64,000 nucleotides of DNA, taken from IMG/VR virus record IMGVR_UViG_3300037882_001770, positions 1 to 64,000 of that record; one strand, given 5' to 3'. The notes under the pieces were generated by a model. The model worked only from the letters and a program-made list of their open reading frames with translations. It made no database searches and was not told where the DNA came from. Position numbers and translations under genes: made by a program. This document shows positions 1 to 21,829 of this stretch, in pieces; the stretch's first letter is position 1, and each line of letters opens with the position of its first letter.

Positions 1-99
1 ATAATAGAAATAGGCAATGCAGTTACAAATCTTATTGATTCCAATGAAGGCTGGATTGAATTTGCTAGAGCAATACTAAAGAAAGCGAGTGAGAAATGA
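1..99 (+). CDS. 3' end of a hypothetical phage protein (partial; ...WIEFARAILKKASEK*)
   Basis: Frame open from position 1 to TGA at 97-99, overlapping ATG 96 (ATGA). Confidence 0.6.
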   Translation: MIEIGNAVTNLIDSNEGWIEFARAILKKASEK

Positions 100-281
100 C
101 AGAAAAAGAAATATTTGAGTTGTTTGATTTATATGGCACTGACATGGGTGATTACTATGAAATTGAAGTAGGTCGTATTGCACTGACCACTTACAACCTG
201 CCGTTCCAGCCTACCAAGCTGAAAAACTTTGATGAGTTTCATCAGCGTTATGGCAAGTATATCTTGCAAGCTTCGGCCTAG
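96..281 (+). CDS. hypothetical protein, 61 aa
   Basis: ORF track; ATGA coupling with upstream ORF. Confidence 0.6.
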   Translation: MTEKEIFELFDLYGTDMGDYYEIEVGRIALTTYNLPFQPTKLKNFDEFHQRYGKYILQASA

Positions 282-334
282 GAATAGGCCCGGAAGGCTG
301 TGGTCATCACAGGCTGTGTCCTCCACAGCCTTCC
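275..334 (+). promoter_or_regulatory. two adjacent RNA hairpins (possible terminator or processing structure)
   Basis: GGCCTA-GGAA-TAGGCC (275-290) and GGAAGGCTGTGG...CCACAGCCTTCC (292-303/323-334, perfect 12-bp stem). Confidence 0.5.
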
Positions 335-364
335 ACCTTTAACCAAAGATCCAAGGAGCCAAAT

Positions 365-598
365 ATGGGATTTGTAGTTTACTCCAAGAAGGACGGTGAA
401 ATGTTGCGCTACTATGACAATAGGTCAAAGGCACAAGCACAGGTCACCGGACACAATCGCAAGGCCATTATACAAGTACTCAAGGGCGATGAGTATGCAA
501 AAGAATGGGACCTATGTGAGTGGGCCGAATATGAACAGGTGTATGCTGAATATTACAACCGAAACAAGATGTATCTGCTGAGCCGGAGCAACTGGTAA
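365..598 (+). CDS. hypothetical protein, 77 aa
   Basis: AAGGAG SD upstream; TAATG coupling to next gene. Confidence 0.75.
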   Translation: MGFVVYSKKDGEMLRYYDNRSKAQAQVTGHNRKAIIQVLKGDEYAKEWDLCEWAEYEQVYAEYYNRNKMYLLSRSNW

Positions 599-939
599 TG
601 AACTATACCTTGATCCGGCTGGATCGGCGACACTCCTATCATGAACAGTTTGCCTACATGATAGAATTTCGCAAGCGACCCGATTGGGCCATTGGCGGAA
701 CTTCGGGTGTGCTAGATTTTGACCGTGTACGCAAGTGGATGAACGAAAGCTGGGGCTGGAGTCAGGATGTAGAAACTCGCACAGAAATGATCAAGGCACA
801 TCGCACCGCCAAGACCGAATCCACAGATGTAAATCGTCGCTGGGCCTGGAGTTGCAGATATCAAGAATATCGTATCTACATGGATGAAAGTGCTGTAAGC
901 CTGTTCAAACTCAAATGGAGCCAGGATGCGGTTGCCTGA
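598..939 (+). CDS. small 'LRW-family' protein
   Basis: C-terminal YMDESAVSLFKLKW; internal KWMNESWG. Confidence 0.75.
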   Translation: MNYTLIRLDRRHSYHEQFAYMIEFRKRPDWAIGGTSGVLDFDRVRKWMNESWGWSQDVETRTEMIKAHRTAKTESTDVNRRWAWSCRYQEYRIYMDESAVSLFKLKWSQDAVA

Positions 940-1144
940 TGCCGACTGGCCCTATATCTGTTATACCAGCCATCCCTATCCTGAAGTGTGTGCCTGGTGT
1001 GAACAGAATATTGGCAATTTTGATCGGGATTGGTACAAGCTGGGCGAGGATATCATGGCGCAGAGCATAATGACAGACTACAAAAGTACTTACATGTTCC
1101 GTGACCAGCGGCATGCCATGCTGTTCGAGTTGAGGTGGGCATGA
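926..1144 (+). CDS. small 'LRW-family' protein
   Basis: AWCEQNIG; ends YMFRDQRHAMLFELRWA. Confidence 0.8.
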   Translation: MRLPDADWPYICYTSHPYPEVCAWCEQNIGNFDRDWYKLGEDIMAQSIMTDYKSTYMFRDQRHAMLFELRWA

Positions 1145-1347
1145 TGGTATACAAATCTCCCGCAATGCCAGAGGCTTGGGCCTGTATGGAGTGGTGTCGG
1201 GTTCAGTTTGGTGGCGAAGGTGAACCCTACTGGGAAAAGTATGGCGGAGTTGATATTGCACATGGGTTACGCTGGTGGCGCAGACAAGGACACTTGTTTT
1301 TTTGCAATGAGAAAGATTACTTGTTATATTTGTTGAGGTGGGCATAA
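1141..1347 (+). CDS. small 'LRW-family' protein
   Basis: Start moved to ATG 1141 after GAGGTG; ends FFCNEKDYLLYLLRWA. Confidence 0.8.
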   Translation: MMVYKSPAMPEAWACMEWCRVQFGGEGEPYWEKYGGVDIAHGLRWWRRQGHLFFCNEKDYLLYLLRWA

Positions 1348-1517
1348 TGACACTCAATAAAGATCATGCAGTTTCGTGTAAAGACATAACCAACGATCAA
1401 TGGAACTGGTTGTGCAATACTATAGGAACTCCTAGAAAAGATTGGCACTATAACTTTGCACATATTTGGTTTCTTCGAGAAGAACACAAAACTCTTTGGA
1501 TGTTAAGGTGGGCATGA
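1347..1517 (+). CDS. small 'LRW-family' protein, 56 aa (not in ORF track)
   Basis: Manual translation MTLNKDHAVSCKDITNDQWNWLCNTIGTPRKDWHYNFAHIWFLREEHKTLWMLRWA; coupled on both sides. Confidence 0.8.
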   Translation: MTLNKDHAVSCKDITNDQWNWLCNTIGTPRKDWHYNFAHIWFLREEHKTLWMLRWA

Positions 1518-1867
1518 AAACCGTACGCAGAACCATTATTATCCGCGAGCGGGATTTGTTTGCGCTCATGCAAACCACCATTCGCAAGAATCTATTTGAT
1601 CGCTTTGATGTGGAACCGCTAACTTATCAGGAGATACAGAATGAAATCCTGATCAACACCCTTAAAGGTGAGACTCCGCCTCAGTACAGCACCTTGCCCA
1701 ACGTGTACGAAACTCTCATGTACAAGGAAGGCAACTTGTATAATAAACAGTATTTGTCCTGGCACCTGACCATGGACTATCCTGCTGGACAGATCTATGT
1801 GCAGAGTCGTATGAATCAACCTAGAGAACCCTTGCATCGTGTGACCTTTGAGAAGGATTATGCGTAG
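1514..1867 (+). CDS. hypothetical protein
   Basis: ATG 1514 overlaps previous TGA, SD AAGGTG. Confidence 0.65.
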   Translation: MKTVRRTIIIRERDLFALMQTTIRKNLFDRFDVEPLTYQEIQNEILINTLKGETPPQYSTLPNVYETLMYKEGNLYNKQYLSWHLTMDYPAGQIYVQSRMNQPREPLHRVTFEKDYA

Positions 1868-2102
1868 ACGATTACACGAATCTCGTTGTTTTAGACTGCA
1901 ACAAGAAACCAACCGTAAAGGTCGTAAGTTCTATCGTATTGTCTGGTGGAATTGGATTGACTTGCATGATCAAGACGAACAACTAAGAGACCTAATAGAT
2001 CCACAACGCAACAAAAGTGGAAAGAATGGTAGCAGTTGGAAGTTTAGCAATCTTAAAGAAGCAGAACAAATGTATAGTATGTTGTTGTTGAGGTGGTCAT
2101 AA
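1860..2102 (+). CDS. small 'LRW-family' protein
   Basis: AAGGA SD; ends WKFSNLKEAEQMYSMLLLRWS. Confidence 0.75.
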   Translation: MRRRLHESRCFRLQQETNRKGRKFYRIVWWNWIDLHDQDEQLRDLIDPQRNKSGKNGSSWKFSNLKEAEQMYSMLLLRWS

Positions 2103-2314
2103 TGACAAGAGTCCTAGACAAAACCTTATGGCCTTGCTGGGTTGATACCGAGTTTGTCAGTGTGGATGATTCTTTTAAGAGGCAACACTGGCTCAAAGAC
2201 AATGTTGGTGCACAACACACAGACTGGCATTTGATCAGTCCTAGCATGGGTGTTCAGCGTTGGCACTTTGCCCGTGAACAAGATGCTGTGCTATTTCAGT
2301 TGAGGTGGGCATGA
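2102..2314 (+). CDS. small 'LRW-family' protein
   Basis: HWLKDNVG; ends WHFAREQDAVLFQLRWA. Confidence 0.8.
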   Translation: MTRVLDKTLWPCWVDTEFVSVDDSFKRQHWLKDNVGAQHTDWHLISPSMGVQRWHFAREQDAVLFQLRWA

Positions 2315-2586
2315 CCGGTCAACTTGATCGACTCGAAGACGAACTTACTGAGTCACTCGGTAAAGCAATGAGTGAATCTATAGACTTCGAAGTGCTGTGC
2401 AGTGTGTATGTGCCTGAAGGTTGGACTCGAATTGAAACCAAATATGTTGCTTGCAACGAGGCAGAGTGGGCTGAAATAATTGGGTGGGTCAACAGTAATT
2501 TTACCGGTGCTTATCGAGAAAACTGTGGTGTATGGTTGATCGAACGACCCGAAGATGCTACAATGTTTATGTTGAGGTGGGTATGA
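2311..2586 (+). CDS. small 'LRW-family' protein
   Basis: GWVNSNFTG; ends WLIERPEDATMFMLRWV. Confidence 0.8.
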   Translation: MTGQLDRLEDELTESLGKAMSESIDFEVLCSVYVPEGWTRIETKYVACNEAEWAEIIGWVNSNFTGAYRENCGVWLIERPEDATMFMLRWV

Positions 2587-2960
2587 AAATTAAAGAATTT
2601 TACAACCGGTTTGAAATGCGTGTGCAAACTAGCAATCATCGTTTACGCAGAATGAAGCCGCTCCATCTCAGAACTGATGTTTGGAACACTCATCTCAGTG
2701 ACGAACTTGTATGGAACTTGACCGAGGCAGCAGAAGAAGTCGAGTGCGTGGATGTGACCATGCCTGTGGATCGGCTTAAAGAGTTAGAGAGATTCCTAAC
2801 GCACTATGAGCGAGCCGAAGACGAATGGCGCAAGCATATGAGTAAGACAGGAGAACTATTGGCACAACACCGCGAGGACGAGCGTGTTAGGATTAAGAAT
2901 CCAGCAGTTCGTCAAGCATACGAGCACTACTTAACATTATTAAACTTGTGTAGAGATTAA
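2583..2960 (+). CDS. hypothetical protein (C-terminal NPAVRQAYEHYLTLLNL helix)
   Basis: ATG 2583 overlaps previous TGA. Confidence 0.7.
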   Translation: MKIKEFYNRFEMRVQTSNHRLRRMKPLHLRTDVWNTHLSDELVWNLTEAAEEVECVDVTMPVDRLKELERFLTHYERAEDEWRKHMSKTGELLAQHREDERVRIKNPAVRQAYEHYLTLLNLCRD

Positions 2961-2961
2961 T

Positions 2962-3285
2962 ATGCAACCCTGGCAAGCCGAGATGTTGATCAAGCTCGAA
3001 CAAGGTCCGTTGACCATAAACGTAGGTCGTCAATCAGGTAAATCTGATTGGTATAAATTGTTTAGGAGTTTTATGGAAAAGCCAGCCAGCAGATTTGTGC
3101 CTTATACCTTACATCACCGGACGGGCTTGATGATACAAGACTACATGTGGTGGCATGAGAACGAGCGTGAAATTTTAAACTGGATGGCGGAACATTTGCC
3201 CCGTGGCATCGAGCATCAGCAGGGTATGACTATTACCTTTGATACGGATAAAGATCGCATGATATTCTTGCTGAGGTGGGCATAG
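2962..3285 (+). CDS. small 'LRW-family' protein
   Basis: NWMAEHLP; ends ITFDTDKDRMIFLLRWA. Confidence 0.8.
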   Translation: MQPWQAEMLIKLEQGPLTINVGRQSGKSDWYKLFRSFMEKPASRFVPYTLHHRTGLMIQDYMWWHENEREILNWMAEHLPRGIEHQQGMTITFDTDKDRMIFLLRWA

Positions 3286-3455
3286 TGTTCAAGTTCTCTC
3301 GACAATATGCTGTGTTTGGTCGCATCACAAACGATCAGTGGAACTGGTTGTGCAATAGTATTAGTCTACCGCAAAAAGAATGGACCGTGAGCAAAGGTGC
3401 TGTTTGGTTCAAACAAGAAAAACACAAAACACTTTATGTATTGAGGTGGGCATGA
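3285..3455 (+). CDS. small 'LRW-family' protein, 56 aa, GTG start (not in ORF track); paralogue of 1347-1517
   Basis: Manual translation MFKFSRQYAVFGRITNDQWNWLCNSISLPQKEWTVSKGAVWFKQEKHKTLYVLRWA. Confidence 0.8.
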   Translation: MFKFSRQYAVFGRITNDQWNWLCNSISLPQKEWTVSKGAVWFKQEKHKTLYVLRWA

Positions 3456-3715
3456 AACTCATAAGATCTACAACCACTGTAAATTATTGGAGATTCTGCG
3501 ACGGGGAGGTTCGTGATCATCCCATTATGGATCACCAGCCACGCGGTTGGTACTGTTGGGTATATCCCCGGGACGACACCGAATTTGTCACGTGGATGAA
3601 AGCCAACTGTCCCGGTGCCGAAGTCACACATAGATTCAACAACGGTAATCCCATGCATACAGTTTACATTAGTGACGATCAGGAAGCCACTGTGTTTGGC
3701 TTGAAATGGCTATGA
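3452..3715 (+). CDS. small 'LRW-family' protein
   Basis: ATG 3452; TWMKANCP; ends VYISDDQEATVFGLKWL. Confidence 0.8.
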   Translation: MKLIRSTTTVNYWRFCDGEVRDHPIMDHQPRGWYCWVYPRDDTEFVTWMKANCPGAEVTHRFNNGNPMHTVYISDDQEATVFGLKWL

Positions 3716-3894
3716 TCAAATTTAGAGGACCCCAAGGACCCTGGGAACCAGTGTTTGCGTGGAAACCGGTCAAGGATATTCACGGTAAGAGGCATTGGTT
3801 AAAACGGATTTATCGTAGAGAACTCAATCAATATGTATGGCCGCCACGAGGTTGGGAATACGGCAATGTATTTGATGTGTTACGAGACTCATGA
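3712..3894 (+). CDS. hypothetical protein
   Basis: ATGA coupling on both sides. Confidence 0.65.
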   Translation: MIKFRGPQGPWEPVFAWKPVKDIHGKRHWLKRIYRRELNQYVWPPRGWEYGNVFDVLRDS

Positions 3895-4139
3895 TCGGCA
3901 TACCGTTACTGAATCACGACGAGCGGCCCGCCTGGTGGTATCGTTTTATAGAGGACATTGTGCGTGTTCAGGATCGTCAACATCTTCCTAAATGGGAACG
4001 CTATAGTTCGTGGATTCAAGATGTCAACAGCAAGCTACAGTTGCACGGGGGTGCTATCAGACGCCTGAACAGTGGCACCTTGTTGGTAACTTTCCGATTA
4101 GATAGCAATTATACTATGTTTGTGTTAAAATATGCATAA
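3891..4139 (+). CDS. small 'LRW-family' protein
   Basis: Ends VTFRLDSNYTMFVLKYA. Confidence 0.75.
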   Translation: MIGIPLLNHDERPAWWYRFIEDIVRVQDRQHLPKWERYSSWIQDVNSKLQLHGGAIRRLNSGTLLVTFRLDSNYTMFVLKYA

Positions 4140-4360
4140 TGATTAGAGTCAGTACAGCAGATCCTGTATTCAATCGGGCATACTTAAATGCGTTCCGTGC
4201 TTTGCCGCTCGGCGATTTAGAAGGGCCCAGACAGTATGGACAGCGTTGGCGTGCGGCGTATCGGTGTAGGGTCGAAATTGGGGGTGCCGAGTGGCCTCAT
4301 TGCAGTTACGTATTTGATCGCGACGAAGACTACACTTGGTTCATGTTGCGATGGGGTTAA
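4139..4360 (+). CDS. small 'LRW-family' protein
   Basis: Ends YVFDRDEDYTWFMLRWG. Confidence 0.8.
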   Translation: MIRVSTADPVFNRAYLNAFRALPLGDLEGPRQYGQRWRAAYRCRVEIGGAEWPHCSYVFDRDEDYTWFMLRWG

Positions 4361-4563
4361 CAATACTTGTGCGGAATGCTGCAGATGCGTTAGTGTTTAA
4401 AGAGCAAGTAGAGGAGCTCTGCACCAAAAACGGCTTTACCTGGCGCTATACTCCGCAAGTAAATAACTGGTTAGGTGATGAGATTATAACTCCTGGCACA
4501 GTAGAATTTAATTTTGCAGATGAAAAAATGGCAACATACTTTCAATTACGGTGGGCTCAATGA
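4351..4563 (+). CDS. small 'LRW-family' protein
   Basis: Ends FNFADEKMATYFQLRWAQ. Confidence 0.75.
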   Translation: MGLTILVRNAADALVFKEQVEELCTKNGFTWRYTPQVNNWLGDEIITPGTVEFNFADEKMATYFQLRWAQ

Positions 4564-4865
4564 CAAGCAAAAAAACAGGAAATTATACTTCCCCTGACAA
4601 AGATGATCTTCATAGATGGTATGTGTACACGCACACCGACCCAGTAACAGGTGAAATTGTATATGTAGGCGAAGGAACCGGACAAAGATTTGCAGCGGTC
4701 AATACAAGAGATGCGCCACATTCTCAATTTCTTAAAGAAATAATCCACGATAAACAATTAGAGTGTTTTTGCATAGTCGAATCAAGACTTACTAAAGAAC
4801 AAGCGAGAGAAATTGAACGAGGATTGATTGCTAAGTACCGACCACGTTTTAATAAATTAAAATGA
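4560..4865 (+). CDS. GIY-YIG family nuclease (stand-alone domain)
   Basis: YVY...YVG...R, helix with E (AREIERGLI) and terminal FN, the order of GIY-YIG catalytic residues. Confidence 0.75.
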   Translation: MTSKKTGNYTSPDKDDLHRWYVYTHTDPVTGEIVYVGEGTGQRFAAVNTRDAPHSQFLKEIIHDKQLECFCIVESRLTKEQAREIERGLIAKYRPRFNKLK

Positions 4866-5143
4866 ACTATTATTACGAAATAGATCCTAGGTACAACGGC
4901 ACTGTGTTTGGTGACAAATGGCGCTACTGGTGCATGTATAACTGTAGTCCTGCGGACAATGGTAAGATGTGTTTTAAAACACACGACGACTTCGTGGCTC
5001 GAAGTACTCGGGTATGGTTAGAAAATCGCAACGGTGTGTATCAGGTACATCCGGCGTGGCACGGGCATCGCCGAGTAGATCCACATGAGTTTACACTAGT
5101 AAAGCTCAAAGCCAAAACAATCAAGTGGTGGCACGATGAATGA
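4862..5143 (+). CDS. hypothetical protein (possibly a divergent LRW-family member)
   Basis: Coupled ORF; DPHEFTLVKLKA weakly resembles the family motif. Confidence 0.65.
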   Translation: MNYYYEIDPRYNGTVFGDKWRYWCMYNCSPADNGKMCFKTHDDFVARSTRVWLENRNGVYQVHPAWHGHRRVDPHEFTLVKLKAKTIKWWHDE

Positions 5144-5477
5144 CAACAAAGTAAAGGTCTTGCATGACAAGTTGCGTGGGTTCAGCAATCAACTACCGGG
5201 ACAAGCCGGAGATGAATATTATGATAGTCAAGCCGCTAGATTAGATACCATCATAGGTGGCGATACCCAACACTTCTTACGCCTGCAACGGGTTAAGAAT
5301 GAATATGATGAACTGGCCAGAGCTGTGCCTGTTGGACAAGGGTTCCTGACCTTTGATGACTATGTACGAGAATACTACGGAATCAAATTGCAGTTTGATG
5401 GTGACAATGTTACACTAGCATATAGCGTTATTAATGAAAAGAAATATGTCATGTTTGTGTTAAAGTTTAACAGATAA
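5136..5477 (+). CDS. small 'LRW-family' protein
   Basis: Ends YSVINEKKYVMFVLKFNR. Confidence 0.75.
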   Translation: MNDNKVKVLHDKLRGFSNQLPGQAGDEYYDSQAARLDTIIGGDTQHFLRLQRVKNEYDELARAVPVGQGFLTFDDYVREYYGIKLQFDGDNVTLAYSVINEKKYVMFVLKFNR

Positions 5478-5725
5478 TGCACGTAAACAATTTTTCTCTT
5501 CCTAGACCATCAGACCGAGCATTAGATCAGTGTCATACGGTTTATATCAACGATCCTGCGTTTAAGATGTGGACTATGAAGAAGTTTTGTAGAGAAAACA
5601 ATTTAAGTTTGATGTGGTCAGAGTTAGTCGAAACTTCGGATGTTAGTGAGTTCTTTGATGAAGTGTGTGCGTTTTATTTTATTGATCCAGCGGATGCTAC
5701 CCTGTTTACATTGAAGTTCAAGTAA
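5477..5725 (+). CDS. small 'LRW-family' protein
   Basis: Ends FYFIDPADATLFTLKFK. Confidence 0.75.
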   Translation: MHVNNFSLPRPSDRALDQCHTVYINDPAFKMWTMKKFCRENNLSLMWSELVETSDVSEFFDEVCAFYFIDPADATLFTLKFK

Positions 5726-5792
5726 TGGCCATAGACCGTAATTCTCAATTAATTTGCTTGCAAGGCAATAAACACAGTAAAAGGACTGCCTG

Positions 5793-6110
5793 TTGAAAAT
5801 CACTGTTAAACATAAGTTAATCATATTTCATAACCCGTATGAATGGTACAACTTGGCCGAACGTTTGAGAAAAGAATACGGCCAAAGTATTATGCTGATC
5901 TCGGCAAGATGTAAACGTGAATTGGGATTTACCGTTAGGCATCACAAAGGACTGGTTCCACATGATCCAGTAGAATGGGAAGTAATGAAATCAGAAGGGT
6001 GGCACCATCGTCATCACTACGAAGACCAAGTACATTTGGATTGGTATAACGAGTCGGCGCAGACTTGGTTTGTGCTTAAATACCTTAATAATGGGCAGGT
6101 TGACCAATAA
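5793..6110 (+). CDS. small 'LRW-family' protein (TTG start)
   Basis: AAGGA SD; LDWYNESAQTWFVLKYL. Confidence 0.7.
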   Translation: MKITVKHKLIIFHNPYEWYNLAERLRKEYGQSIMLISARCKRELGFTVRHHKGLVPHDPVEWEVMKSEGWHHRHHYEDQVHLDWYNESAQTWFVLKYLNNGQVDQ

Positions 6111-6128
6111 AGGCATTTTGGCTATAAT
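6100..6128 (+). promoter_or_regulatory. sigma70-type promoter
   Basis: TTGACC (6100-6105), 17 bp, TATAAT (6123-6128). Confidence 0.75.
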
Positions 6129-6134
6129 AGTAGT

Positions 6135-6428
6135 ATGAAAATAGTTAAATTGGATCAAAGATACGCAGGCTTTCCCAAGTGGAAGTATGCTCTCCAATTT
6201 CCTTTACGCAATCACAACTATAACAAGGAATATTTCAAGTATAAAACCGTATTCCAGGCAATATATGGCCCAGATGCCGAGATAAATCCAGAGTATCATA
6301 CCGCCCAATGGGGTAGTACTCCAAAATGGTTTTATAACGAGAATTGGCATACCAGCTTCGAAAAACGGCGAATTTACTATAATGATCAACGGGTTATGAC
6401 CATGATTCAGCTTAAAATAACAGCTTGA
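6135..6428 (+). CDS. small 'LRW-family' protein (divergent)
   Basis: Ends RIYYNDQRVMTMIQLKI. Confidence 0.7.
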   Translation: MKIVKLDQRYAGFPKWKYALQFPLRNHNYNKEYFKYKTVFQAIYGPDAEINPEYHTAQWGSTPKWFYNENWHTSFEKRRIYYNDQRVMTMIQLKITA

Positions 6429-6453
6429 CCATTAATTCGTGTTATTGTATAAT
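6425..6453 (+). promoter_or_regulatory. sigma70-type promoter
   Basis: TTGACC (6425-6430), 17 bp, TATAAT (6448-6453); followed by AGTAGTAT like the 6100 promoter. Confidence 0.75.
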
Positions 6454-6482
6454 AGTAGTATAGTGAATAATAAGGACAAGTC

Positions 6483-7772
6483 ATGACAACTAGCACACAA
6501 AACAAAAAAGAATCAGACAAGTTTAAGGACTTGCTTGGCCCTACAGATCCCAAATTGGATCGCGAAATACGTGAAAAGCTGATCACAGCTCGTGTAGGAC
6601 TCTTGCTTCGTGCTAGTTTCTTTGGCAACCTGGCTACTCGACTCAAGCTGGTTAATGCCGATGAGTGGTGTCCTACTGCCGCAACCGACGGACGTCACTT
6701 TTACTACAATAGCAGATTTGTAGACATGCTCAAGCCCAAAGAGATTGAGTTCCTGTTTGGACATGAGGTCTTGCACTGTGTGTATGACCACTTTGGTCGT
6801 CGTGGTGATCGTGATCCACAACTGTTCAACATTGCCAATGACTATTGTGTAAATGGCGATTTGAAAAAACATCGTGTAGGTGAGTTTATCACTTCAGTTC
6901 CGTGCTTGTATGATGCCAAGTATGAAGGCATGAGCTCTGAAGAGATCTATGACATCTTGTATGAAAATGCGGAAAAAATCGACATTGGCAGTTTGATCGA
7001 CAAATTGCTGGATGACCACTTGGATGGCGAAGGTCAAGATGGTAGTGGTGAAGGCGACGGTGATGAAAAGAGTGGCAAAGGGTCAGGCCGTCCCAAGTTG
7101 AGTGCAGAAGAGCGTCAAAAGATCAAGGACGAAATCAAAGAAGCTGTGCTTGCGGCTGCGGCTGCCAGTGATGGTGCAGGCAACTTGCCAGCAGGTGTCA
7201 AACGCATTATTGAAGACATGACTGCACCCAAGATGAACTGGCGTGAACTGTTGCGTATGCAATTGGAAAGTACCATGAAGAGTGATTACACCTGGATGCG
7301 TAGCAGTCGCAAAGGTTGGCACATGGACGCGGTAATGCCAGGTATGAAGCTGGATCCAATGATTGATATTGCTGTGAGCTTGGATGCATCTGGATCAATT
7401 AGTGCCAAAATGCTTAACGATTTCTTGAGTGAAGTCGGCGGTATTATGGAACAGTTTCCAGCATATCGCATTCACGTGGTAACCTTTGATACTGAGTGCT
7501 ATAACCCTGTACAGTATGATAGTGAAAACTTGGATGATATCAACACTTACGAAGTCAAAGGTGGTGGTGGCACAGACTTTGATGCTGTATTTCGTTACTT
7601 TAAAGATAATGAAATTGAACCCAAGCGTCATATTATGTTTACAGACGGTTACCCATGTGGTAGCTGGGGCGATGAGATGTACTGTGACACTGTGTTTATT
7701 ATCCACGGTAGCACTAGTATTGTTCCACCATTTGGTCAATATGCTTACTACGAAGAAGAAAAAAGTCACTAA
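6483..7772 (+). CDS. putative metallopeptidase plus VWA-domain protein (DUF2201-like)
   Basis: TAATDG, HEVLH (HEXXH), acidic linker, MIDAS DASGS, GGGGTDF, FTDG. Confidence 0.85.
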   Translation: MTTSTQNKKESDKFKDLLGPTDPKLDREIREKLITARVGLLLRASFFGNLATRLKLVNADEWCPTAATDGRHFYYNSRFVDMLKPKEIEFLFGHEVLHCVYDHFGRRGDRDPQLFNIANDYCVNGDLKKHRVGEFITSVPCLYDAKYEGMSSEEIYDILYENAEKIDIGSLIDKLLDDHLDGEGQDGSGEGDGDEKSGKGSGRPKLSAEERQKIKDEIKEAVLAAAAASDGAGNLPAGVKRIIEDMTAPKMNWRELLRMQLESTMKSDYTWMRSSRKGWHMDAVMPGMKLDPMIDIAVSLDASGSISAKMLNDFLSEVGGIMEQFPAYRIHVVTFDTECYNPVQYDSENLDDINTYEVKGGGGTDFDAVFRYFKDNEIEPKRHIMFTDGYPCGSWGDEMYCDTVFIIHGSTSIVPPFGQYAYYEEEKSH

Positions 7773-7960
7773 TGCATAAAAAAATTAAACAACTTAAGTT
7801 GCAGGCTGGCATACAGGACAATCCAGATCAAGAAGGGCTAGATTTGTTTGCTGAATTGATTATACAAGAGTGTGCTCATATAGCTGACTGTCCAAGTAGT
7901 TTCAAGCACACTAACGGATACAAGATTCTTCGTTACTTTGACGTAAAGGAATTAGTATAA
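7772..7960 (+). CDS. hypothetical protein (FAELIIQEC motif)
   Basis: TAATG-coupled ORF. Confidence 0.65.
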   Translation: MHKKIKQLKLQAGIQDNPDQEGLDLFAELIIQECAHIADCPSSFKHTNGYKILRYFDVKELV

Positions 7961-8127
7961 TGAACAAGTTTAGAGCGTGGTACCTTCGTAACTATACCGA
8001 AATTACTTGGTTCCTAATTGGCTTTTTGACCTTTGCTGGATTGCAAGATCTGTCACAGGGTGATTATGTGCAAGCTGTTATCAGTTTTATTTTGGTAGCG
8101 GTGAACTGGTCATTTGCACGTCGATAA
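7960..8127 (+). CDS. small membrane protein, 55 aa (not in ORF track)
   Basis: MNKFRAWYLRNYTEITWFLIGFLTFAGLQDLSQGDYVQAVISFILVAVNWSFARR; two hydrophobic segments; TAATG coupling; followed by terminator. Confidence 0.7.
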   Translation: MNKFRAWYLRNYTEITWFLIGFLTFAGLQDLSQGDYVQAVISFILVAVNWSFARR

Positions 8128-8143
8128 GCAGGTCAGTTTAGCC

Positions 8144-8170
8144 AAAACACCCCATTTAGGGGTGTTTTTT
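8144..8170 (+). terminator. Rho-independent terminator
   Basis: AAAACACCCC-ATTTA-GGGGTGTTTT plus T-run. Confidence 0.85.
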
Positions 8171-8217
8171 ATTGTAAAAATAAATTAACAGCATGTATTT
8201 CTATTAAATATCACTGT

Positions 8218-8421
8218 ATGGAAAACAATCAAATCACAGTAACTGATCTTGTTACTATAAAGAATATCATAGATCTAGCATCTGCGCGAGGAGCATTTCG
8301 AGCAGGCGAAATGAAAGAAGTTGGCGAAGTGTATGAAAAACTTACGCAATTTTTAGAAGCAGTAATAGCGCAGGCACAGGCCGCCAATGGCACCGAGCCT
8401 GACCAAACCCAAGGAGAATAA
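8218..8421 (+). CDS. hypothetical protein
   Basis: ORF preceded by TAAATA. Confidence 0.7.
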   Translation: MENNQITVTDLVTIKNIIDLASARGAFRAGEMKEVGEVYEKLTQFLEAVIAQAQAANGTEPDQTQGE

Positions 8422-8422
8422 A

Positions 8423-9127
8423 ATGGCATTTATGAAACACGTAGGTAAACATAGCGATCGTAGCATTGCTTTGTTATTTAGACAAGTACCAGGCGAGGAC
8501 CATATGTGCTTGCTCATCTATCCAGAAGTGTTACCAGCACACTGGCACGATGCAATCATGAAAGTATTAGAAAGCGATGTTGGTCAACAAGCAGAAGAGT
8601 TTGCAGAAGCATTGAGCCGTAGCCTGTTGCCGGACGGTCGTGTGATTCTTAACACCTTGCATCAAGAAAAGATGATCAAAAAAGTTCGTACCAGCGATGT
8701 TATCATGACTCCTAATTCGGGTGCTAGAATTCGCCTCGATGAACTTAACAAAATGTTAAACGAAATGAAACTTGGTGCAGATGCTATCAAAAAGATGGCG
8801 GAAAATGATGCGGCTCGTGGCCTAGTTGACGCACCTACCAAACGTGCCGCCGAAGCAGAATTCAAAGCTGGTCGTCAAGCTCCTGTACAAGCTCCACAGA
8901 ATGGTGCATTAAGTGATCGCGATATTGCAGCTAACATGTTGACCCAAGCACAACGCATGGAAATTGAAGCCAAGGGCATGATTGCCGAAGCCGCACGTAT
9001 GAAAAAAGACGCCGAGCGTATGCACCCAGGTGTAATTGCAAACGATTCTTCATCAACCTCTGCTACTACTGCACCCAAGCGCGGTCGTCCAGCTAAAGCT
9101 AAGGCGGTAGCGGATGCAGCTCAATGA
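8423..9127 (+). CDS. hypothetical phage protein with coiled coil and basic C-terminal tail
   Basis: AAGGAG SD, ATG 8423 (MAFMKHVG...); C-terminal PKRGRPAK (AT-hook-like). Confidence 0.75.
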   Translation: MAFMKHVGKHSDRSIALLFRQVPGEDHMCLLIYPEVLPAHWHDAIMKVLESDVGQQAEEFAEALSRSLLPDGRVILNTLHQEKMIKKVRTSDVIMTPNSGARIRLDELNKMLNEMKLGADAIKKMAENDAARGLVDAPTKRAAEAEFKAGRQAPVQAPQNGALSDRDIAANMLTQAQRMEIEAKGMIAEAARMKKDAERMHPGVIANDSSSTSATTAPKRGRPAKAKAVADAAQ

Positions 9128-10113: not shown

Positions 10114-10449
10114 ATGGCCATTGCAAATACACATCGATCAGAAGATGCCACTCGTTTATTTAAAGCACCCGAGTATAAACTCATCAATGATAAAGTAGTA
10201 AAATTTAACGATGTCAAGGTGCACGAATTTAATATGGGAGATGTAGAGGACCCTGACTTGTATGCGGCAGAGCCATTATGGCAGTGGCAACAAACAGAAG
10301 CCGGAAAATGGGTCATGTCTCATGCAGTAGAAACTCCCTTCTGGCATCGCATAGTGAATCCATACACTTTTGGTTATACTTACTACGTGATTGCTCGGCT
10401 TTGCGAGCAGGATCAAACATACTGGACACTTAAATGGCAAAAATCTTAG
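10114..10449 (+). CDS. LRW-family-like protein heading the sugar operon
   Basis: Ends ARLCEQDQTYWTLKW; KWVMSHA helix. Confidence 0.7.
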   Translation: MAIANTHRSEDATRLFKAPEYKLINDKVVKFNDVKVHEFNMGDVEDPDLYAAEPLWQWQQTEAGKWVMSHAVETPFWHRIVNPYTFGYTYYVIARLCEQDQTYWTLKWQKS

Positions 10450-11405
10450 TAACAGGTGGTCTTGGGTTCATCGGGCACAATGTTGTAGCCCTGTTAGAAT
10501 CTCAAGGTCATCACTGTGTCATTACCGATACTCAAACTACCTACGGTATTATCCCACAAGACGAAATAGATTATCTCGTAAGTGAACGAAAAACAAAAAT
10601 AAAAACTGACAGAATCTATCGAATCGACATTGCTGATCGAGATGGTATTGATTGGGTCGTACGCGAACACAAGCCCGATGTTGTCATACACATGGCCAGC
10701 TTTCCTAGACAGAAAGTAGTCAATGCTAATCCTTCCTATGGCGCCCAGGTCATGATGGAGGGGTTGATTAATGTGTTAGAAAGCGCAAAACGTCACAAGG
10801 TAGAACGTGTAGTTTATATTTCAAGTTCAATGGTATATGGTGACTTTGAAGATCAAGTAACTGAGGATAGTGAATGCAATCCTATTGGACAATATGGCAT
10901 TATGAAATTCGCAGGGGAGCAACTTGTTAAAGATTACCATCGCCGCGGCGCTTTTGATTATGTCATTATTCGCCCCAGTGCTGTATATGGGCCACTTGAT
11001 GTCGAAGATAGAGTCGTTGCAAAATTTATGCTGGCAGCCATGCGCGGAGAAACTCTCAAGGTAAACGGCGCAGAAGAAACCCTAGACTTTACCTATGTTG
11101 ACGATGCTGCTGCCGGTATTGTATCCGCCACTACACGTGTCATGAGTGCCAATCGCATATATAATATTACAAAATCATGTTCAGTTGCGCTGTTAACCGC
11201 GGCCGAAATGATTGTTGCCCTTGTGGGCAAAGGAACCGTAGAAGTTCGCGACAGAGACGCAGATTTTCCCAGTCGCGGCGCATTAGATATTGATCGTGCT
11301 AGAGTAATTCTTGGCTACGATCCTAAGATTGATATTGAAGAGGGTTTCCAAAGGTACTATGATTGGCTTAAAAATTCCGTTTACTGGTCTCAAAAAACAG
11401 TATAA
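10434..11405 (+). CDS. NAD-dependent NDP-sugar epimerase/dehydratase (extended SDR)
   Basis: TGGLGFIG, SSSMVYG, YGIMK (YxxxK), RPSAVYGP, DFTYVDD. Confidence 0.93.
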   Translation: MAKILVTGGLGFIGHNVVALLESQGHHCVITDTQTTYGIIPQDEIDYLVSERKTKIKTDRIYRIDIADRDGIDWVVREHKPDVVIHMASFPRQKVVNANPSYGAQVMMEGLINVLESAKRHKVERVVYISSSMVYGDFEDQVTEDSECNPIGQYGIMKFAGEQLVKDYHRRGAFDYVIIRPSAVYGPLDVEDRVVAKFMLAAMRGETLKVNGAEETLDFTYVDDAAAGIVSATTRVMSANRIYNITKSCSVALLTAAEMIVALVGKGTVEVRDRDADFPSRGALDIDRARVILGYDPKIDIEEGFQRYYDWLKNSVYWSQKTV

Positions 11406-19764: not shown

Positions 19765-20324
19765 GCACGGTTGTACCTAAGATATACGCTATTGCGTTGC
19801 ATGCCAGGAGGAACTGGTGTTGCTAATCCATGCAATACCTGTCCTGGCTTTTCAAAAAAATATCCAAAGTTATTTCGATAAGGGAGTTGTAATAGTATTT
19901 TGTCTGGGGTTTGATATATTGTAGTGCCCAATATTGGACCATTCCATTTTGCAGATTCTCGAGACATGTATATTTGTACTGCGTAATCAAAAAAATCAGG
20001 ATCCTGGTGTGGACTGATAGTGTATCCTTCAAAGTCGGCCCAAAGACTTATTCCTGCAGGGATGACCGGCCTCCCCAACATGCCGTTAATTTCTTTTAAT
20101 ATTTCAGAGCTAGCAGCGTAAGATACTATTTGATCGACAATCTTGCTTTTTCCTCGATACAAACGTCGACCTGCGCGATGACTAAAAACTTCAGTATCGG
20201 GCCAATCTGTGTCATCTATATTGTCAAATATAGAGAGTACTTGTTCTGCTAATTCTGCGGTAAAAAAATTATCTAGTAGATAAATGTTGGACTGTCCTAG
20301 ATAATTGATTACTGTATTCTTCAT
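19761..20324 (-). CDS. 2OG-Fe(II) oxygenase
   Basis: HQD...H...RxS arrangement (PHQD, VLHG, RNS). Confidence 0.75.
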   Translation of the reverse strand: MKNTVINYLGQSNIYLLDNFFTAELAEQVLSIFDNIDDTDWPDTEVFSHRAGRRLYRGKSKIVDQIVSYAASSEILKEINGMLGRPVIPAGISLWADFEGYTISPHQDPDFFDYAVQIYMSRESAKWNGPILGTTIYQTPDKILLQLPYRNNFGYFFEKPGQVLHGLATPVPPGMQRNSVYLRYNRA

Positions 20325-21829
20325 TAGCTACAAACCTTTACACCATATTCTTTCTCAAAACGATCTGCATCTGCGCGGTCATTAACCATGGGCTCTCCAC
20401 GTATGTTAAGACTAGTGTTTAAAAGCATAGGACATCCTGTTTCTTTGTACCACGCTTCGAGTAATCTTCTAATGCCTGAGCCATTATCTGCAACCGTTTG
20501 AATTCGGCTAGTACCATCCACATGACAGATAGCAGGAAATAAATCAGGACGGCGACAATGGGCGACAATTTGCATATAACTGCTATCACTCCAGCCCCGG
20601 GGCATAATAAAAAATTCATCCACATGCTCTGCCAGGATAACCGGTGCAAACGGTCTAAACTTTTGTCTACGCTTGATTTCATTTACTCGATCCTTTATAT
20701 CCACTCCTCGGGGGTCGGCAAGGAGACTTCTATTTCCCAGTGCTCTGGGTCCAAACTCGGCTCGACCACTAGCGACACCGACGATTCTATCACGGAGTAA
20801 ACAATCAACAAGGGCATGGACAGGATATTCTCCTGAGATGTTATGGCCAAGGTACGCATCTCGCCAGTTAACTCGTTTTCCGTAGGCCAGTGCGGCAGCA
20901 CCAAGACTGCTACCAGCGTCGCCAGGGCAAGGCATGATCCAAATGTTTTCAAAGTATTCACCGAGTTTTCTATTAGCAAGACAATTCAACGCCACGCCGC
21001 CCATGTACACTAGATTCGAACTCCAGTTAAACTCCTGAGCACGTTGCATAACACTATATATCAATTCTTCTGCCACCGATTGTGCAGCTCCGGCAATATC
21101 TTCATTGGATACGCCATACATAAATTCTTTTTCTACACCCAAGTGTAGATTTTCTTTAAATTTAAGTTCTTGTACATCGTCTACCAAATGATGTTTCATT
21201 GGGTGGGCATACACATTGCCATGAGTACTGTATGCACTCATGCCCATGGTAATATATTCTTCATCCATTGGATGCAGGCCAATTCGTTGAGTCATTGCAC
21301 TATAAAAAAGTCCAATAGAGTGTGGATATCGTTGTCTCCATAGTCGTTTGTAGATTGCGTGACCCGATCCAGTGTATTCTGCGCCCCAAATGCTAATAGT
21401 ATCAAACTCACCAATTGCATCAATTACTACCACAGTGGCACGTTCATATGGACTGGTTTGAAATCCGGCAGCTGCATGACTCAAATGGTGCGGATAACAT
21501 ACTTCATGTTCGGCCGAATTTGGATACCATGCACCAAGATGTTGAGTCAATGCGCCACGCACAGTCCACGGACCAAATTTATTTTGTCTGGTATATAGCT
21601 GTTGTAAATTGTGCATCCATGGGCGCTCATACCAGGCCACAGTATCAAACTGCCACGGGCATAGTTGTGAAACAAACTCGTCACAAAAATTACTATCATT
21701 TTTAATTTTACTGTAGCGTTCACTGTGTCCAGCAAACTCTATGTCGCCGTGACTGTTAATAACCGTGGCTGCGGCATCGTGATATCCTGCACTTAATCCT
21801 AGGGTGTACTTGACTGGCGCTCGTTTCAT
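20324..21829 (-). CDS. carbamoyltransferase (NodU/CmcH family)
   Basis: HDAAA, HHLSHAA, GGVALNC, GDAG, EFGPRALGNRS, FRPFAP, LLNTSLN. Confidence 0.95.
   Translation of the reverse strand: MKRAPVKYTLGLSAGYHDAAATVINSHGDIEFAGHSERYSKIKNDSNFCDEFVSQLCPWQFDTVAWYERPWMHNLQQLYTRQNKFGPWTVRGALTQHLGAWYPNSAEHEVCYPHHLSHAAAGFQTSPYERATVVVIDAIGEFDTISIWGAEYTGSGHAIYKRLWRQRYPHSIGLFYSAMTQRIGLHPMDEEYITMGMSAYSTHGNVYAHPMKHHLVDDVQELKFKENLHLGVEKEFMYGVSNEDIAGAAQSVAEELIYSVMQRAQEFNWSSNLVYMGGVALNCLANRKLGEYFENIWIMPCPGDAGSSLGAAALAYGKRVNWRDAYLGHNISGEYPVHALVDCLLRDRIVGVASGRAEFGPRALGNRSLLADPRGVDIKDRVNEIKRRQKFRPFAPVILAEHVDEFFIMPRGWSDSSYMQIVAHCRRPDLFPAICHVDGTSRIQTVADNGSGIRRLLEAWYKETGCPMLLNTSLNIRGEPMVNDRADADRFEKEYGVKVCS

What the first reader, a model, noticed from the sequence alone, without database searches (positions are those of the whole stretch)
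1130..3455. Dual-coded 15-bp junction: protein motif, Shine-Dalgarno and stop/start overlap, a possible cassette-shuffling site
Seen: eight junctions read (T/C)T(G/A)AGGTGG(G/T)(C/T)AT(GA/AA/AG). Each encodes L-R-W-x-stop with Arg always as AGG, contains GAGGTG/AAGGTG, and overlaps the next ATG/GTG. Established: GAGGTG pairs with the 16S anti-SD. Inference: every family member carries the translation start signal for whichever gene follows, making the genes plug-and-play. The shared DNA could also seed microhomology recombination that duplicates, deletes or reorders cassettes without an integrase.
Basis: partly seen in the sequence, partly recalled or inferred. Interest (0 to 1): 0.72.

Follow-up and report, generated by a model that had tools for sequence, protein, structure and literature searches.

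The report
Gene-end motif doubling as ribosome site
In an uncultured giant phage, a large family of tiny genes ends in the same 15 bases, which encode the protein's last four residues, carry the ribosome-binding site for the next gene and overlap its start codon; this is a tidy case of ordinary translational coupling, and its proposed role in gene shuffling is plausible but not shown.

Summary
YTRAGGTGGKYAT occurs 8 times, all on the + strand between 1130 and 3455. It occurs nowhere else in the 317-kb phage genome, against 0.01 expected by chance.

Each copy is the last four codons (L-R-W-A/S/V) plus stop of one member of a paralogous family of small proteins. The family has a confident beta-alpha-beta-beta-alpha model, about 3,955 metagenomic cluster representatives, and no Pfam, PHROG or NCBIfam entry.

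The dual coding is well supported:
- AGG is the rarest Arg codon genome-wide (3.4%), yet it fills 9 of 11 family Arg positions here and 51 of 78 across relatives.
- AGG goes with a stop/start overlap placed 5 or 8 nt downstream.
- In IMG/VR, at least 120 copies of the exact AGG 15-mer sit at family gene ends. The synonymous CGT version does so once.

"Every member" is wrong: about half the family has Lys at this position and carries no Shine-Dalgarno sequence.

The array is a hyperplastic region. Relatives differ by whole-gene gains, losses and reordering, and some breakpoints lie inside the motif. Genes outside the family show equally precise indels without it, so motif-driven recombination is consistent with the data but unproven.

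Verdict: a new variant of a known kind, of moderate interest.

The parts
1130..1144 (+). Junction B|C: TTGAGGTGGGCATGA. It encodes L-R-W-A-stop of B, and the ATG of C overlaps the stop (ATGA).
1333..1347 (+). Junction C|D: TTGAGGTGGGCATAA, followed by TG. Stop TAA shares its last A with the ATG of D.
1503..1517 (+). Junction D|E: TTAAGGTGGGCATGA. The downstream gene E is not a family member.
2088..2102 (+). Junction F|G: TTGAGGTGGTCATAA, followed by TG. It looks like a chimera of the L006 F|n1 and n2|G junctions. L006 carries two extra family genes here.
2300..2314 (+). Junction G|H: TTGAGGTGGGCATGA. It is the left end of a metagenomic joint that removes H exactly (2310 joined to 2583).
2572..2586 (+). 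Junction H|I: TTGAGGTGGGTATGA. The downstream gene I is not a family member.
3271..3285 (+). Junction J|K: CTGAGGTGGGCATAG, followed by TG. The GTG start of K overlaps TAG by 1 nt.
3441..3455 (+). Junction K|L: TTGAGGTGGGCATGA.
926..1517 (+). Family genes B (926-1144), C (1141-1347) and D (1347-1517). All three end in the AGG-type motif.
   Evidence: Profile hits at E 1.7e-14, 6e-13 and 1.4e-12; alignment.
1514..1867 (+). Gene E, not a family member (ends FEKDYA). It is translated from the D junction. Orthologs are present in L006, L018 and L020.
1860..2586 (+). Family genes F (1860-2102), G (2102-2314) and H (2311-2586), all ending in the AGG-type motif. G is the member that was modelled.
2583..2960 (+). 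Gene I, not a family member.
2962..3455 (+). Family genes J (2962-3285) and K (3285-3455). K is a 71%-identical (nt) paralog of D.
3452..4139 (+). Family genes L (3452-3715, ends LKWL) and N (3891-4139, ends LKYA), with the non-family gene M (3706-3894) between them. These are Lys-type ends without an SD. M is absent in L006 and in two metagenome runs.
4139..4563 (+). Family genes O (4139-4360, ends L-R-W-G with CGA TGG) and P (4351-4563, Arg = CGG). The ATG of P is embedded in the CGATGG of O. Relatives keep CGATGG or CAATGG.
4560..5143 (+). Non-family genes Q (4560-4865) and R (4862-5143). Q is absent from L006. The indel is gene-precise and flanked only by AATGA.
5136..6110 (+). Conserved distal members S (5136-5477, LKFNR), T (5477-5725, LKFK) and U (5793-6110, LKY plus a tail). 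All are Lys-type and hold a fixed order in relatives. S and U match by the motif only, not by the profile.
598..939 (+). Gene A, ending FKLKWSQDAVA. It resembles the family at the motif level only.
10114..10449 (+). Outlying weak family member Y (ends TLKWQKS).
   Evidence: E 0.0017

Best explanation
The 15-mer is the 3' end of a gene family, shaped by three overlapping constraints.

(1) Protein. The genes encode a small beta-alpha-beta-beta-alpha domain whose C-terminal helix ends in L-[R/K]-[W/F/Y], followed by one small residue. The domain, and so the ORF, stops there.

(2) Ribosome binding. Where the basic residue is Arg, the otherwise rare codon AGG is used, usually after a Leu codon ending in G or A. 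The mRNA then reads GAGGUG or AAGGUG, complementary to the 16S 3' end, 5 nt (ATGA type) or 8 nt (TAATG type) before the next start.

(3) Stop/start overlap. The last sense codon ends in A (GCA, TCA, GTA), so that with TGA it forms the next gene's ATG.

The genes sit head to tail in one promoter-poor early operon near the genome's left end. A ribosome finishing one gene is held by the Shine-Dalgarno (SD) sequence and restarts on the next (termination-reinitiation, possibly with some de novo initiation). Any gene placed behind a family member therefore inherits a working start signal.

Shown here: the motif, its reading frame, the codon bias and its link to downstream starts, the fold model, the size of the family, and the variability of the array among relatives.

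Inferred: that the SD is used, that translation is coupled, and that the short shared sequence also helps precise whole-gene deletion, duplication or exchange by microhomology.
For: Motif and frame.

Codon bias:
- AGG is 136 of 4,056 Arg codons (3.4%) in 295 long ORFs.
- At the family position it is 9 of 11 in this genome and 51 of 78 in non-redundant members from 17 sources. Among AGR codons it is 51 of 59, against 14% expected.
- The Leu codon before AGG ends in G in 31 of 51 cases, against about 20% otherwise (p = 5e-7).

Link to the next start:
- 47 of 51 AGG junctions have a stop/start overlap, against 67 of 109 others (p = 3e-5).
- The AGG-to-ATG spacing is 5 nt in 29 cases and 8 nt in 13.
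- SD 4-mers genome-wide peak at -13 to -9 from the ATG, which brackets the motif's -9 and -12.

Not inherited identity: dS between the window and L006 orthologs is already 0.6-2.3, with dN/dS 0.06-0.2, and the paralogs share only about 20% of residues. Nucleotide identity stops sharply outside the 13-15 nt.

Virosphere-wide synonymous control: the exact AGG 15-mer gave at least 145 matches in a truncated scan, 120 of them at family ORF ends. The CGT synonym gave 98 matches in a complete scan, 1 at a family end. The AGA synonym gave 33 family ends among 94 matches.

A distant cultured phage (Sinorhizobium phage Phosso) uses AGG in the two members sampled whose Arg is followed by an ATGA overlap. 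It uses CGC or CGT in three members with no overlapping start.

Fold and family: pLDDT 87.4, with the helix at residues 59-69 ending in LRW; 3,955 representatives at E <= 1e-3.

General precedent: intragenic SDs before overlapping starts are typical, and removing them cut reinitiation by 60-90% in 3 of 5 E. coli gene pairs and abolished it in a fourth (PMC6728339).
Against: - No expression, ribosome-profiling or reporter data exist. The phage is uncultured and the host's 16S rRNA is unknown.
- Half of the family has Lys at this position and no SD, so the SD is not required for the next gene to be made.
- The p-values treat paralogs and orthologs as independent, which they are not.
- A Lys-Arg toggle (AAR to AGR) would by itself favour AGR over CGN. 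It does not explain AGG over AGA.
- The TGA-type spacing (GAGG starting at -9) lies on the short side of the genome's SD distribution.
- The codon usage of the other contigs was assumed to resemble that of this genome.
Confidence: 0.8

Rival explanations
1. The motif is primarily a recombination site. The 13-15 bp of identity at gene ends seeds microhomology-mediated or short-homology recombination that deletes, duplicates and reorders whole genes. It would be an integrase-free counterpart of PeSL or integron cassettes, and that role would be why the DNA sequence is kept. This reading can coexist with the Shine-Dalgarno (SD) explanation.
For: - The array between genes a0 and R holds from about 3 to about 25 family genes in relatives. 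The order of C, D, I and J relative to E, F, G and H differs between the window, L006 and L020.
- BLAST segments of the window against L006 end inside the motif: window 2088-2103 aligns to both L006 1016-1031 and 1455-1470.
- Metagenome contigs join 2310 to 2583 (removing H exactly) and 1513 to 4139, each with 4 nt that fit either side.
- The F|G junction of the window reads as a chimera of two L006 junctions.
- Genes ending in the motif are the ones rarely kept in relatives, while the Lys-type members O, P, S, T and U are kept in order.
Against: - Indels are just as gene-precise where the motif is absent. M is flanked by ATGA only. Q is flanked by AATGA. The F deletion in L018 joins at ATGC-TAGA around the start codons.
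- In the window-versus-L006 comparison about 6 of 8 motif junctions are broken, against about 5 of 12 others, which is not significant.
- Selection for intact, still-coupled operons would filter random breakpoints to the same result.
- Young, dispensable paralogs would both share the motif and be variable, so the correlation is confounded.
- Recombination does not explain why AGG tracks the presence and spacing of a downstream start.
- No circles or minority deletion reads could be examined, because only assembled contigs of relatives were available.
Confidence: 0.2
2. There is no nucleotide-level function. The identity reflects only conservation of the peptide L-R-W-A, plus shared descent or gene conversion among paralogs, plus a mutational path in which Arg arises from Lys (AAG to AGG).
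For: - The position toggles between Arg and Lys about equally (78 and 78 of 160), and AAG to AGG is a single transition.
- L, [R/K] and [W/F/Y] are conserved as residues even where no SD results.
Against: - AGG outnumbers AGA 51 to 8, although AGA is six times commoner genome-wide and AAA is commoner than AAG.
- AGG correlates with stop/start overlap and with a preceding purine.
- Synonymous sites are saturated even between orthologs.
- Identity ends abruptly at the motif, with no conversion tracts.
- The CGT synonym is essentially unused at family gene ends across IMG/VR.
Confidence: 0.05
3. The motif is another kind of signal: an RNA structure or known RNA family, a promoter-terminator cassette (PeSL), or an endonuclease or integrase target.
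For: It is repeated at gene boundaries in a variable region.
Against: - There is no Rfam match in 1-8500 at E <= 0.1.
- The eight 81-nt junction windows fold no better than shuffles (z from -0.44 to +0.98).
- No strong sigma-70-like promoter falls on a junction. The strong promoters lie at 6100 and 6425.
- The genome has no tyrosine recombinase.
- Q gave no Pfam hit, including GIY-YIG.
Confidence: 0.03

Closest known systems
Translational coupling at overlapping stop/start codons (ATGA, TAATG) with a Shine-Dalgarno (SD) sequence inside the upstream gene: termination-reinitiation (Huber et al. 2019, PMC6728339)
   Same: The genes are co-directional with 4-nt or 1-nt overlaps, and the SD lies in the last codons of the upstream ORF. 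The SD helps but is not always needed, which matches the Lys-type members here that lack one.
   Different: Here the SD is written into the conserved C-terminal peptide of a whole paralogous family. The same 13-15 nt therefore recurs word for word 8 times in one array and hundreds of times across uncultured phages, through a codon (AGG) that is otherwise rare. Coupling itself has not been measured.
PeSL cassettes (promoter-early stem-loops) in the hyperplastic regions of T4-type phages (Arbiol et al. 2010, PMC2839356; Comeau et al. 2014, PMC4122927)
   Same: A repeated regulatory motif sits at the borders of small, dispensable genes of unknown function in a hyperplastic region of a T4-related myovirus. 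Relatives differ by insertion, deletion and replacement of whole genes at those borders. Each mobile unit brings an expression signal with it.
   Different: PeSLs are intergenic sigma-70 promoters plus terminator hairpins that act on transcription. Here there is no intergenic space, no promoter and no hairpin. The signal acts on translation and lies inside coding sequence. PeSL recombination and mini-circles were shown experimentally; nothing comparable has been shown here.
Integron gene cassettes
   Same: Arrays of promoterless small genes in one orientation, with a repeated sequence at each boundary and variable content.
   Different: There is no integrase and no attC-like inverted repeat or structure. 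The repeat is coding sequence.
Deletions between short direct repeats in T4 and T7 (classical illegitimate recombination; cited from general knowledge, not checked here)
   Same: Repeats of around 10-15 bp can delimit precise deletions. The F deletion in L018 joins at ATGC-TAGA, and two joints fall inside the 13-mer.
   Different: Those are sporadic repeats. Here the repeat is supplied systematically by a gene family. The frequency of such events is unknown.

Membership tests
Overlapping gene pair with intragenic Shine-Dalgarno sequence (translational coupling) | Co-directional genes whose stop and start codons overlap (ATGA or TAATG type) | tested here: met
   All 8 junctions qualify: 5 ATGA, 2 TAATG, 1 TAGTG. 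So do 47 of 51 AGG-type junctions in relatives.
Overlapping gene pair with intragenic Shine-Dalgarno sequence (translational coupling) | A sequence complementary to the 16S 3' end within about 12 nt upstream of the downstream start, inside the upstream ORF | tested here: met
   GAGGTG or AAGGTG lies 5 or 8 nt before the ATG. The genome's own genes show SD 4-mers peaking at -13 to -9. The host 16S itself is unknown.
Overlapping gene pair with intragenic Shine-Dalgarno sequence (translational coupling) | Downstream translation depends on upstream translation and on the SD | not testable with these tools
   This needs reporter constructs or ribosome profiling.
PeSL regulatory cassette (T4-type hyperplastic regions) | A strong sigma-70-like early promoter within the repeat | tested here: not met
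   No junction carries a promoter match of 10-11 of 12. The strong ones lie at 6100-6128 and 6425-6453. None of the 27 genome-wide consensus promoters lies within the array upstream of 6100.
PeSL regulatory cassette (T4-type hyperplastic regions) | A stem-loop terminator within the repeat | tested here: not met
   The junction windows fold no better than shuffles (z from -0.44 to +0.98).
PeSL regulatory cassette (T4-type hyperplastic regions) | The repeats coincide with indel or replacement breakpoints between related phages | tested here: inconclusive
   Several breakpoints lie in the motif, but others of equal precision do not. There is no significant excess.
PeSL regulatory cassette (T4-type hyperplastic regions) | Excised mini-circles joined at the repeat | not testable with these tools
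   Only assembled contigs of relatives were available, with no raw reads of this phage.
Integron cassette array | An adjacent tyrosine-recombinase integrase | tested here: not met
   PF00589 gave no match in the 317-kb genome, and the controls were positive. The record is 89% complete.
Integron cassette array | An attC imperfect inverted repeat at each cassette end | tested here: not met
   There is no significant structure at the junctions.
Uncurated 'LRW-tail' small phage protein family (defined here) | A domain of about 60 aa, beta-alpha-beta-beta-alpha, with the pattern W..N.G ... W.F..E.DA..F.L[RK][WFY] ending at the C-terminus | tested here: met
   Alignment A2. AF2 model with pLDDT 87.4. 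The profile finds 18 places in this genome and 3,955 representatives. A, S and U match only by the tail motif.
Any curated protein family (Pfam, PHROGs, NCBIfam) | A significant profile match | tested here: not met
   No hits. PDB fold matches are only generic ferredoxin-, ACT- or RRM-like, with Z <= 6.5.

The most novel reading that the evidence does not exclude
The junction is a self-propagating 'coupler'. Because every AGG-type family gene ends with a portable ribosome-binding site, an overlapping start and 13-15 bp of identity, these genes (and any gene caught between two of them) could be excised, duplicated and reinserted by short-homology recombination without an integrase, and be expressed wherever they land. 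That would drive both the expansion of this family to thousands of clusters and the hyperplasticity of the early regions of giant phages. It would be a translational counterpart of PeSL shuffling.
Probability: 0.15. Interest if true: 0.75.

Novelty: new variant of a known kind. Interest (0 to 1): 0.45.

Why it matters
- It is an unusually clean natural example of one short sequence under three selective demands at once: a protein helix end, a ribosome-binding site and a stop/start overlap. It comes with a built-in synonymous control (AGG against AGA and CGN) that can be read across thousands of metagenomic genes.
- It brings to notice a very large, uncurated family of small phage proteins, with up to about 25 copies per genome, that has no entry in Pfam, PHROGs or NCBIfam. 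One cultured carrier, Sinorhizobium phage Phosso, makes it testable.
- If the shared junction also promotes gene-precise recombination, it would explain how promoterless accessory genes are shuffled in the early regions of giant phages while staying expressed.
- Practically, the motif helps place the start codons of tiny genes in such arrays, and it marks the family in raw sequence.

Tried and rejected
- Curated families: Pfam, PHROGs and NCBIfam scans of window members, of 65 aligned members and of distant metagenomic members gave nothing.
- Cultured phages: megablast and blastn of the region, and tblastn of member G, against 50,697 cultured phage records gave no match. The family was found in Phosso and Atu_ph07 only with the profile.
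- Fold searches: PDB by Foldseek and VIA-align gave only generic alpha/beta sandwiches at Z <= 6.5, so no function can be read from the fold. BFVD returned only uncharacterized proteins.
- RNA: Rfam gave nothing. Folding of the junction RNA showed no structure above shuffles, so PeSL-like, attC-like and SD-masking hairpin readings are dropped.
- Integrase: none found.
- Sequencing runs: only three runs, kept as assembled contigs and holding 5-7% of the sampled words. Laying them gave the arrangements of relatives, not minority variants or circles of this phage. Several 'joints' with short sides or 'between: not known' were ignored.
- GTG inside AGGTGG as the true start: in frame with the ATG, but it has no SD upstream. 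It is considered less likely, not excluded.
The share of matches at family gene ends was used instead.
- Literature: a search for a prior description of the family found nothing relevant.
- Q had looked like a GIY-YIG homing endonuclease by eye, but Pfam gave no hit. That reading is left as an impression only.
Full report
**What the window is**

The window is the first 64 kb of a single-contig viral record of 317,493 bp with 42.7% GC. IMG/VR classes the record as linear and CheckV puts it at 89% complete.

The large ORFs include a baseplate wedge protein that is 32-35% identical to those of Agrobacterium phage Atu_ph07, Sinorhizobium phage Phosso and the Rak2/GAP32-like giant myoviruses. Nothing in 50,697 cultured phage records matches the region at the DNA level. 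It is therefore an uncultured jumbo myovirus. Related contigs come from metagenomes, among them a freshwater sediment run.

**The observation**

YTRAGGTGGKYAT occurs exactly 8 times, all on the + strand, between 1130 and 3453. Shuffles give a mean of 0.01. It occurs nowhere else in the 317 kb on either strand.

In frame, each copy reads Leu, Arg (AGG), Trp, a small residue, then stop, at the end of a small ORF. The next ORF starts in ATGA (5 cases), TAATG (2) or TAGTG (1).

**What the genes are**

The eight ORFs belong to a paralogous family of 56-113-aa proteins laid head to tail on the + strand from about 600 to 6110. Single members lie at 10114-10449 and near 194.4, 217.4, 219.2 and 220.7 kb.

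The members share only about 20% of their residues, but they share a clear pattern: W..N.G ... W.F..E.DA..F.L[R/K][W/F/Y] plus one small residue at the very C-terminus.

With a 65-sequence alignment, AlphaFold2 gives a confident beta-alpha-beta-beta-alpha model (pLDDT 87.4, pTM 0.73). In it, L-R-W closes the C-terminal helix.

Comparison with the syntenic contig L006 gives dN/dS of 0.06-0.2 at dS of 0.6-2.3, so these are real proteins under constraint.

A profile of the family finds 3,955 representatives of 50%-identity clusters at E <= 1e-3. Nearly all are 60-90 aa with the domain ending at the C-terminus, and a few are tandem two-domain fusions.

The family has no Pfam, PHROG or NCBIfam model. 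Its only fold matches are generic alpha/beta sandwiches and uncharacterized proteins of uncultured phages.

With the profile it is found in these records:
- the complete 344-kb relative G001: 23 places
- cultured Sinorhizobium phage Phosso: 34 places
- Atu_ph07: 5 weak places
- GAP32 and SCTP-2: none

Its function is unknown. Its position near the left genome end, its small size, its copy number and its turnover suggest early accessory proteins. That is an inference.

**Is the DNA identity more than the protein demands?**

Yes. In 295 long ORFs of this genome, AGG is the rarest Arg codon: 136 of 4,056, or 3.4%, against 19.9% for AGA and 34.6% for CGT.

At the family's basic position the counts are as follows:
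- In this genome, Arg is AGG in 9 of 11 members.
- In 160 non-redundant members from this genome and 16 related loci, the position is Arg 78 times: AGG 51, AGA 8, CGA 8, CGG 6, CGT 3, CGC 2.
- It is Lys 78 times.

Arg arising from Lys (AAR to AGR) could favour AGR over CGN. It cannot explain 51 AGG against 8 AGA when AGA is six times commoner genome-wide.

Three further links point to the ribosome-binding site:
- The Leu codon before AGG ends in G in 31 of 51 cases, against about 20% elsewhere (p = 5e-7), which gives GAGG.
- 47 of 51 AGG junctions have an overlapping stop/start, against 67 of 109 others (p = 3e-5).
- The distance from AGG to the ATG is 5 nt in 29 cases and 8 nt in 13.

The genome's own genes carry SD 4-mers peaking at -13 to -9, which brackets the motif's positions.

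The identity is not inherited. Synonymous sites are near saturation even between orthologs, and nucleotide similarity between paralogs falls away immediately upstream of the motif.

**A control across the whole IMG/VR collection**

Three exact 15-mers that encode the same peptide were scanned:

| 15-mer | Scan | Matches | At family gene ends |
|---|---|---|---|
| TTGCGTTGGGCATGA (CGT) | complete | 98 | 1 |

In Phosso, the two sampled members whose Arg is followed by an ATGA overlap use AGG. Three members with no overlapping start use CGC or CGT.

Another variant makes the same point. Member O ends L-R-W-G with CGA TGG, and relatives keep CGATGG or CAATGG. This places the ATG of the next gene, P, inside those two codons.

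The p-values assume independent sequences and are therefore too optimistic, but the direction is consistent in every data set.

**How it most likely works**

The array has no strong promoter between its start and 6100. The phage's consensus early promoters (TTGACC-N17-TATAAT) number 27 on the + strand, and the first are at 6100 and 6425. The junctions have no intergenic space and no RNA structure above shuffles.

The simplest reading is a polycistronic early transcript. A ribosome terminating at TGA, TAA or TAG is retained by GAGGUG or AAGGUG pairing with the 16S 3' end, and restarts at the overlapping ATG.

This is the well-known arrangement of overlapping gene pairs. Intragenic SDs are typical there, and removing them reduced reinitiation by 60-90% in 3 of 5 E. 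coli pairs and abolished it in a fourth (PMC6728339).

What is particular here is that the SD is written into the conserved C-terminal peptide of a whole family. Any gene that follows such a member, including the non-family genes E and I, gets the signal.

The claim that every member carries it is wrong. The Lys-type half of the family (L, N, S, T and U in this window) has no SD at that place, so coupling by overlap alone must suffice for those.

**The shuffling idea**

The region is hyperplastic. Between the conserved genes a0 (96-281) and R (4862-5143), relatives carry from about 3 to about 25 family genes. The order of C, D, I and J relative to E, F, G and H differs between the window, L006 and L020. 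O, P, R, S, T and U keep their order.

Evidence that breakpoints fall in the motif:
- Window 2088-2103 aligns to two places in L006 that flank two extra family genes. The window's F|G junction reads as a chimera of those two junctions.
- Metagenome contigs join 2310 to 2583, removing H exactly. They also join 1513 to 4139. In each case 4 nt fit either side.

Evidence that the motif is not needed:
- M is lost between two plain ATGA junctions.
- Q is an insertion flanked only by AATGA.
- The loss of F in L018 and in run X2 joins at ATGC-TAGA around the start codons.
- The replacement of H and I by an unrelated 163-aa gene in L006 has its right end at a junction without the motif.

Counting adjacencies between the window and L006, about 6 of 8 motif junctions and about 5 of 12 others are broken, which is no significant difference.

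Short-homology joining at gene boundaries seems to be general here, and the 13-15-mer is the longest such homology on offer. Selection for intact, coupled operons would produce the same picture. No reads of this phage were available to look for circles or rare deletions.

The genome has no tyrosine integrase, and the junction has none of the parts of a PeSL or an attC site. I rate a real contribution of the motif to recombination at about 0.2. It can coexist with the SD role.

**Comparison with what is known**

- In mechanism, this is a member of the class 'overlapping genes with an intragenic SD'.
- In genome dynamics, it resembles the hyperplastic regions of T4-type phages, where PeSL promoter-terminator cassettes mediate modular shuffling and mini-circle formation (PMC2839356; PMC4122927). 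The signal here is translational, coding and much shorter, and recombination has not been shown.
- It is not an integron.

**Verdict**

The dual-coding interpretation is well supported by independent codon statistics. The 'plug-and-play' reading is reasonable but holds for only about half of the family. Recombination at the motif is open. This is a new variant of a known kind, of moderate interest (0.45).

The most novel reading not excluded is a self-propagating translational coupler that drives cassette shuffling and the expansion of the family. I give it a probability of about 0.15.

Noticed in passing
window 6100-6136 and 6425-6461; genome-wide list: Two near-perfect sigma-70-like promoters (TTGACC-N17-TATAAT) share an identical 14-nt extension, TATAATAGTAGTAT. 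About 27 such sites lie on the + strand of the genome, against 2 on the - strand, with the consensus TTGACCAAAAAT..GCTATAATAGTTGTATAG. They are probably the phage's early promoters. The ORF at 6135-6428 starts 7 nt after the first -10 box, so its mRNA may be leaderless.
   Followed up: partly
window 283-345: A strong hairpin (GGAAGGCTGTGG ... CCACAGCCTTCC) sits between gene a0 (stop at 281) and gene a1 (AAGGAG SD, ATG at 365). It could be a terminator or an RNA-processing site at the head of the array.
   Followed up: no
window 4345-4360 (O|P junction); L006 3600-3612; L017, L018, L020: Here the next gene's ATG is embedded in the Arg-Trp codons themselves (CGA TGG, or CAA TGG in relatives). 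It is a second, different dual-coded solution at the same family position, and it explains the CGA codons.
   Followed up: partly
window 4560-4865: Gene Q (101 aa, with a YVYTH...GEIVYVGEG segment) is present here but absent from L006. The indel is gene-precise and flanked by AATGA. By eye it resembles a small GIY-YIG nuclease, but Pfam gave no hit.
   Followed up: partly
window 6483-7772: PHROGs labels this 429-aa protein an HNH endonuclease (phrog_1314). Pfam instead finds DUF2201_N (putative metallopeptidase, E 2e-39) plus the VWA-like DUF2201 domain. The PHROG name looks misleading. The gene is absent from L006 but conserved in most other relatives.
   Followed up: partly
window 37747-52530 (- strand): A 4,927-aa ORF lies directly next to the baseplate wedge gene (52530-55961). 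Atu_ph07, Phosso and GAP32 also carry a giant structural-protein gene in the same position.
   Followed up: no
window about 8400-34100: A long block of genes looks like sugar or polysaccharide modification. A Nol-like carbamoyltransferase (20324-21829) and a nucleotide-sugar epimerase (10434-11405) were identified. In L006, hexapeptide-transferase and glycosyltransferase genes follow the array directly.
   Followed up: no
proteins P0013, P0014, P0020, P0037, P0057, P0072, P0090: Natural two-domain fusions of the family occur, in which the first domain's L-[RK]-W is followed by a linker and a second copy. This suggests that a junction is occasionally lost to give a fusion. A gene-calling artefact is not excluded.
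   Followed up: no
Sinorhizobium phage Phosso (PV764938.1), e.g. loci L030, L031, L032: This cultured phage carries 34 profile matches in several arrays. The basic residue is often replaced by Thr or Ala (FKLTWS, FKLAWA). In some members an AGG appears one position earlier (F-R-L-T-W, TTT AGG TTA ACC TGG CTA TGA). Phosso is a tractable system for experiments.
   Followed up: partly
L018 7985-8005 compared with window 1855-1870 and 2095-2112: In L018 and in run X2, gene F is missing and E is joined to G at a 9-of-10 microhomology around the two start codons (ATGCGTAGA / ATGCCTAGA). This is evidence that short homology at gene starts, and not only the 15-mer, delimits indels here.
   Followed up: partly
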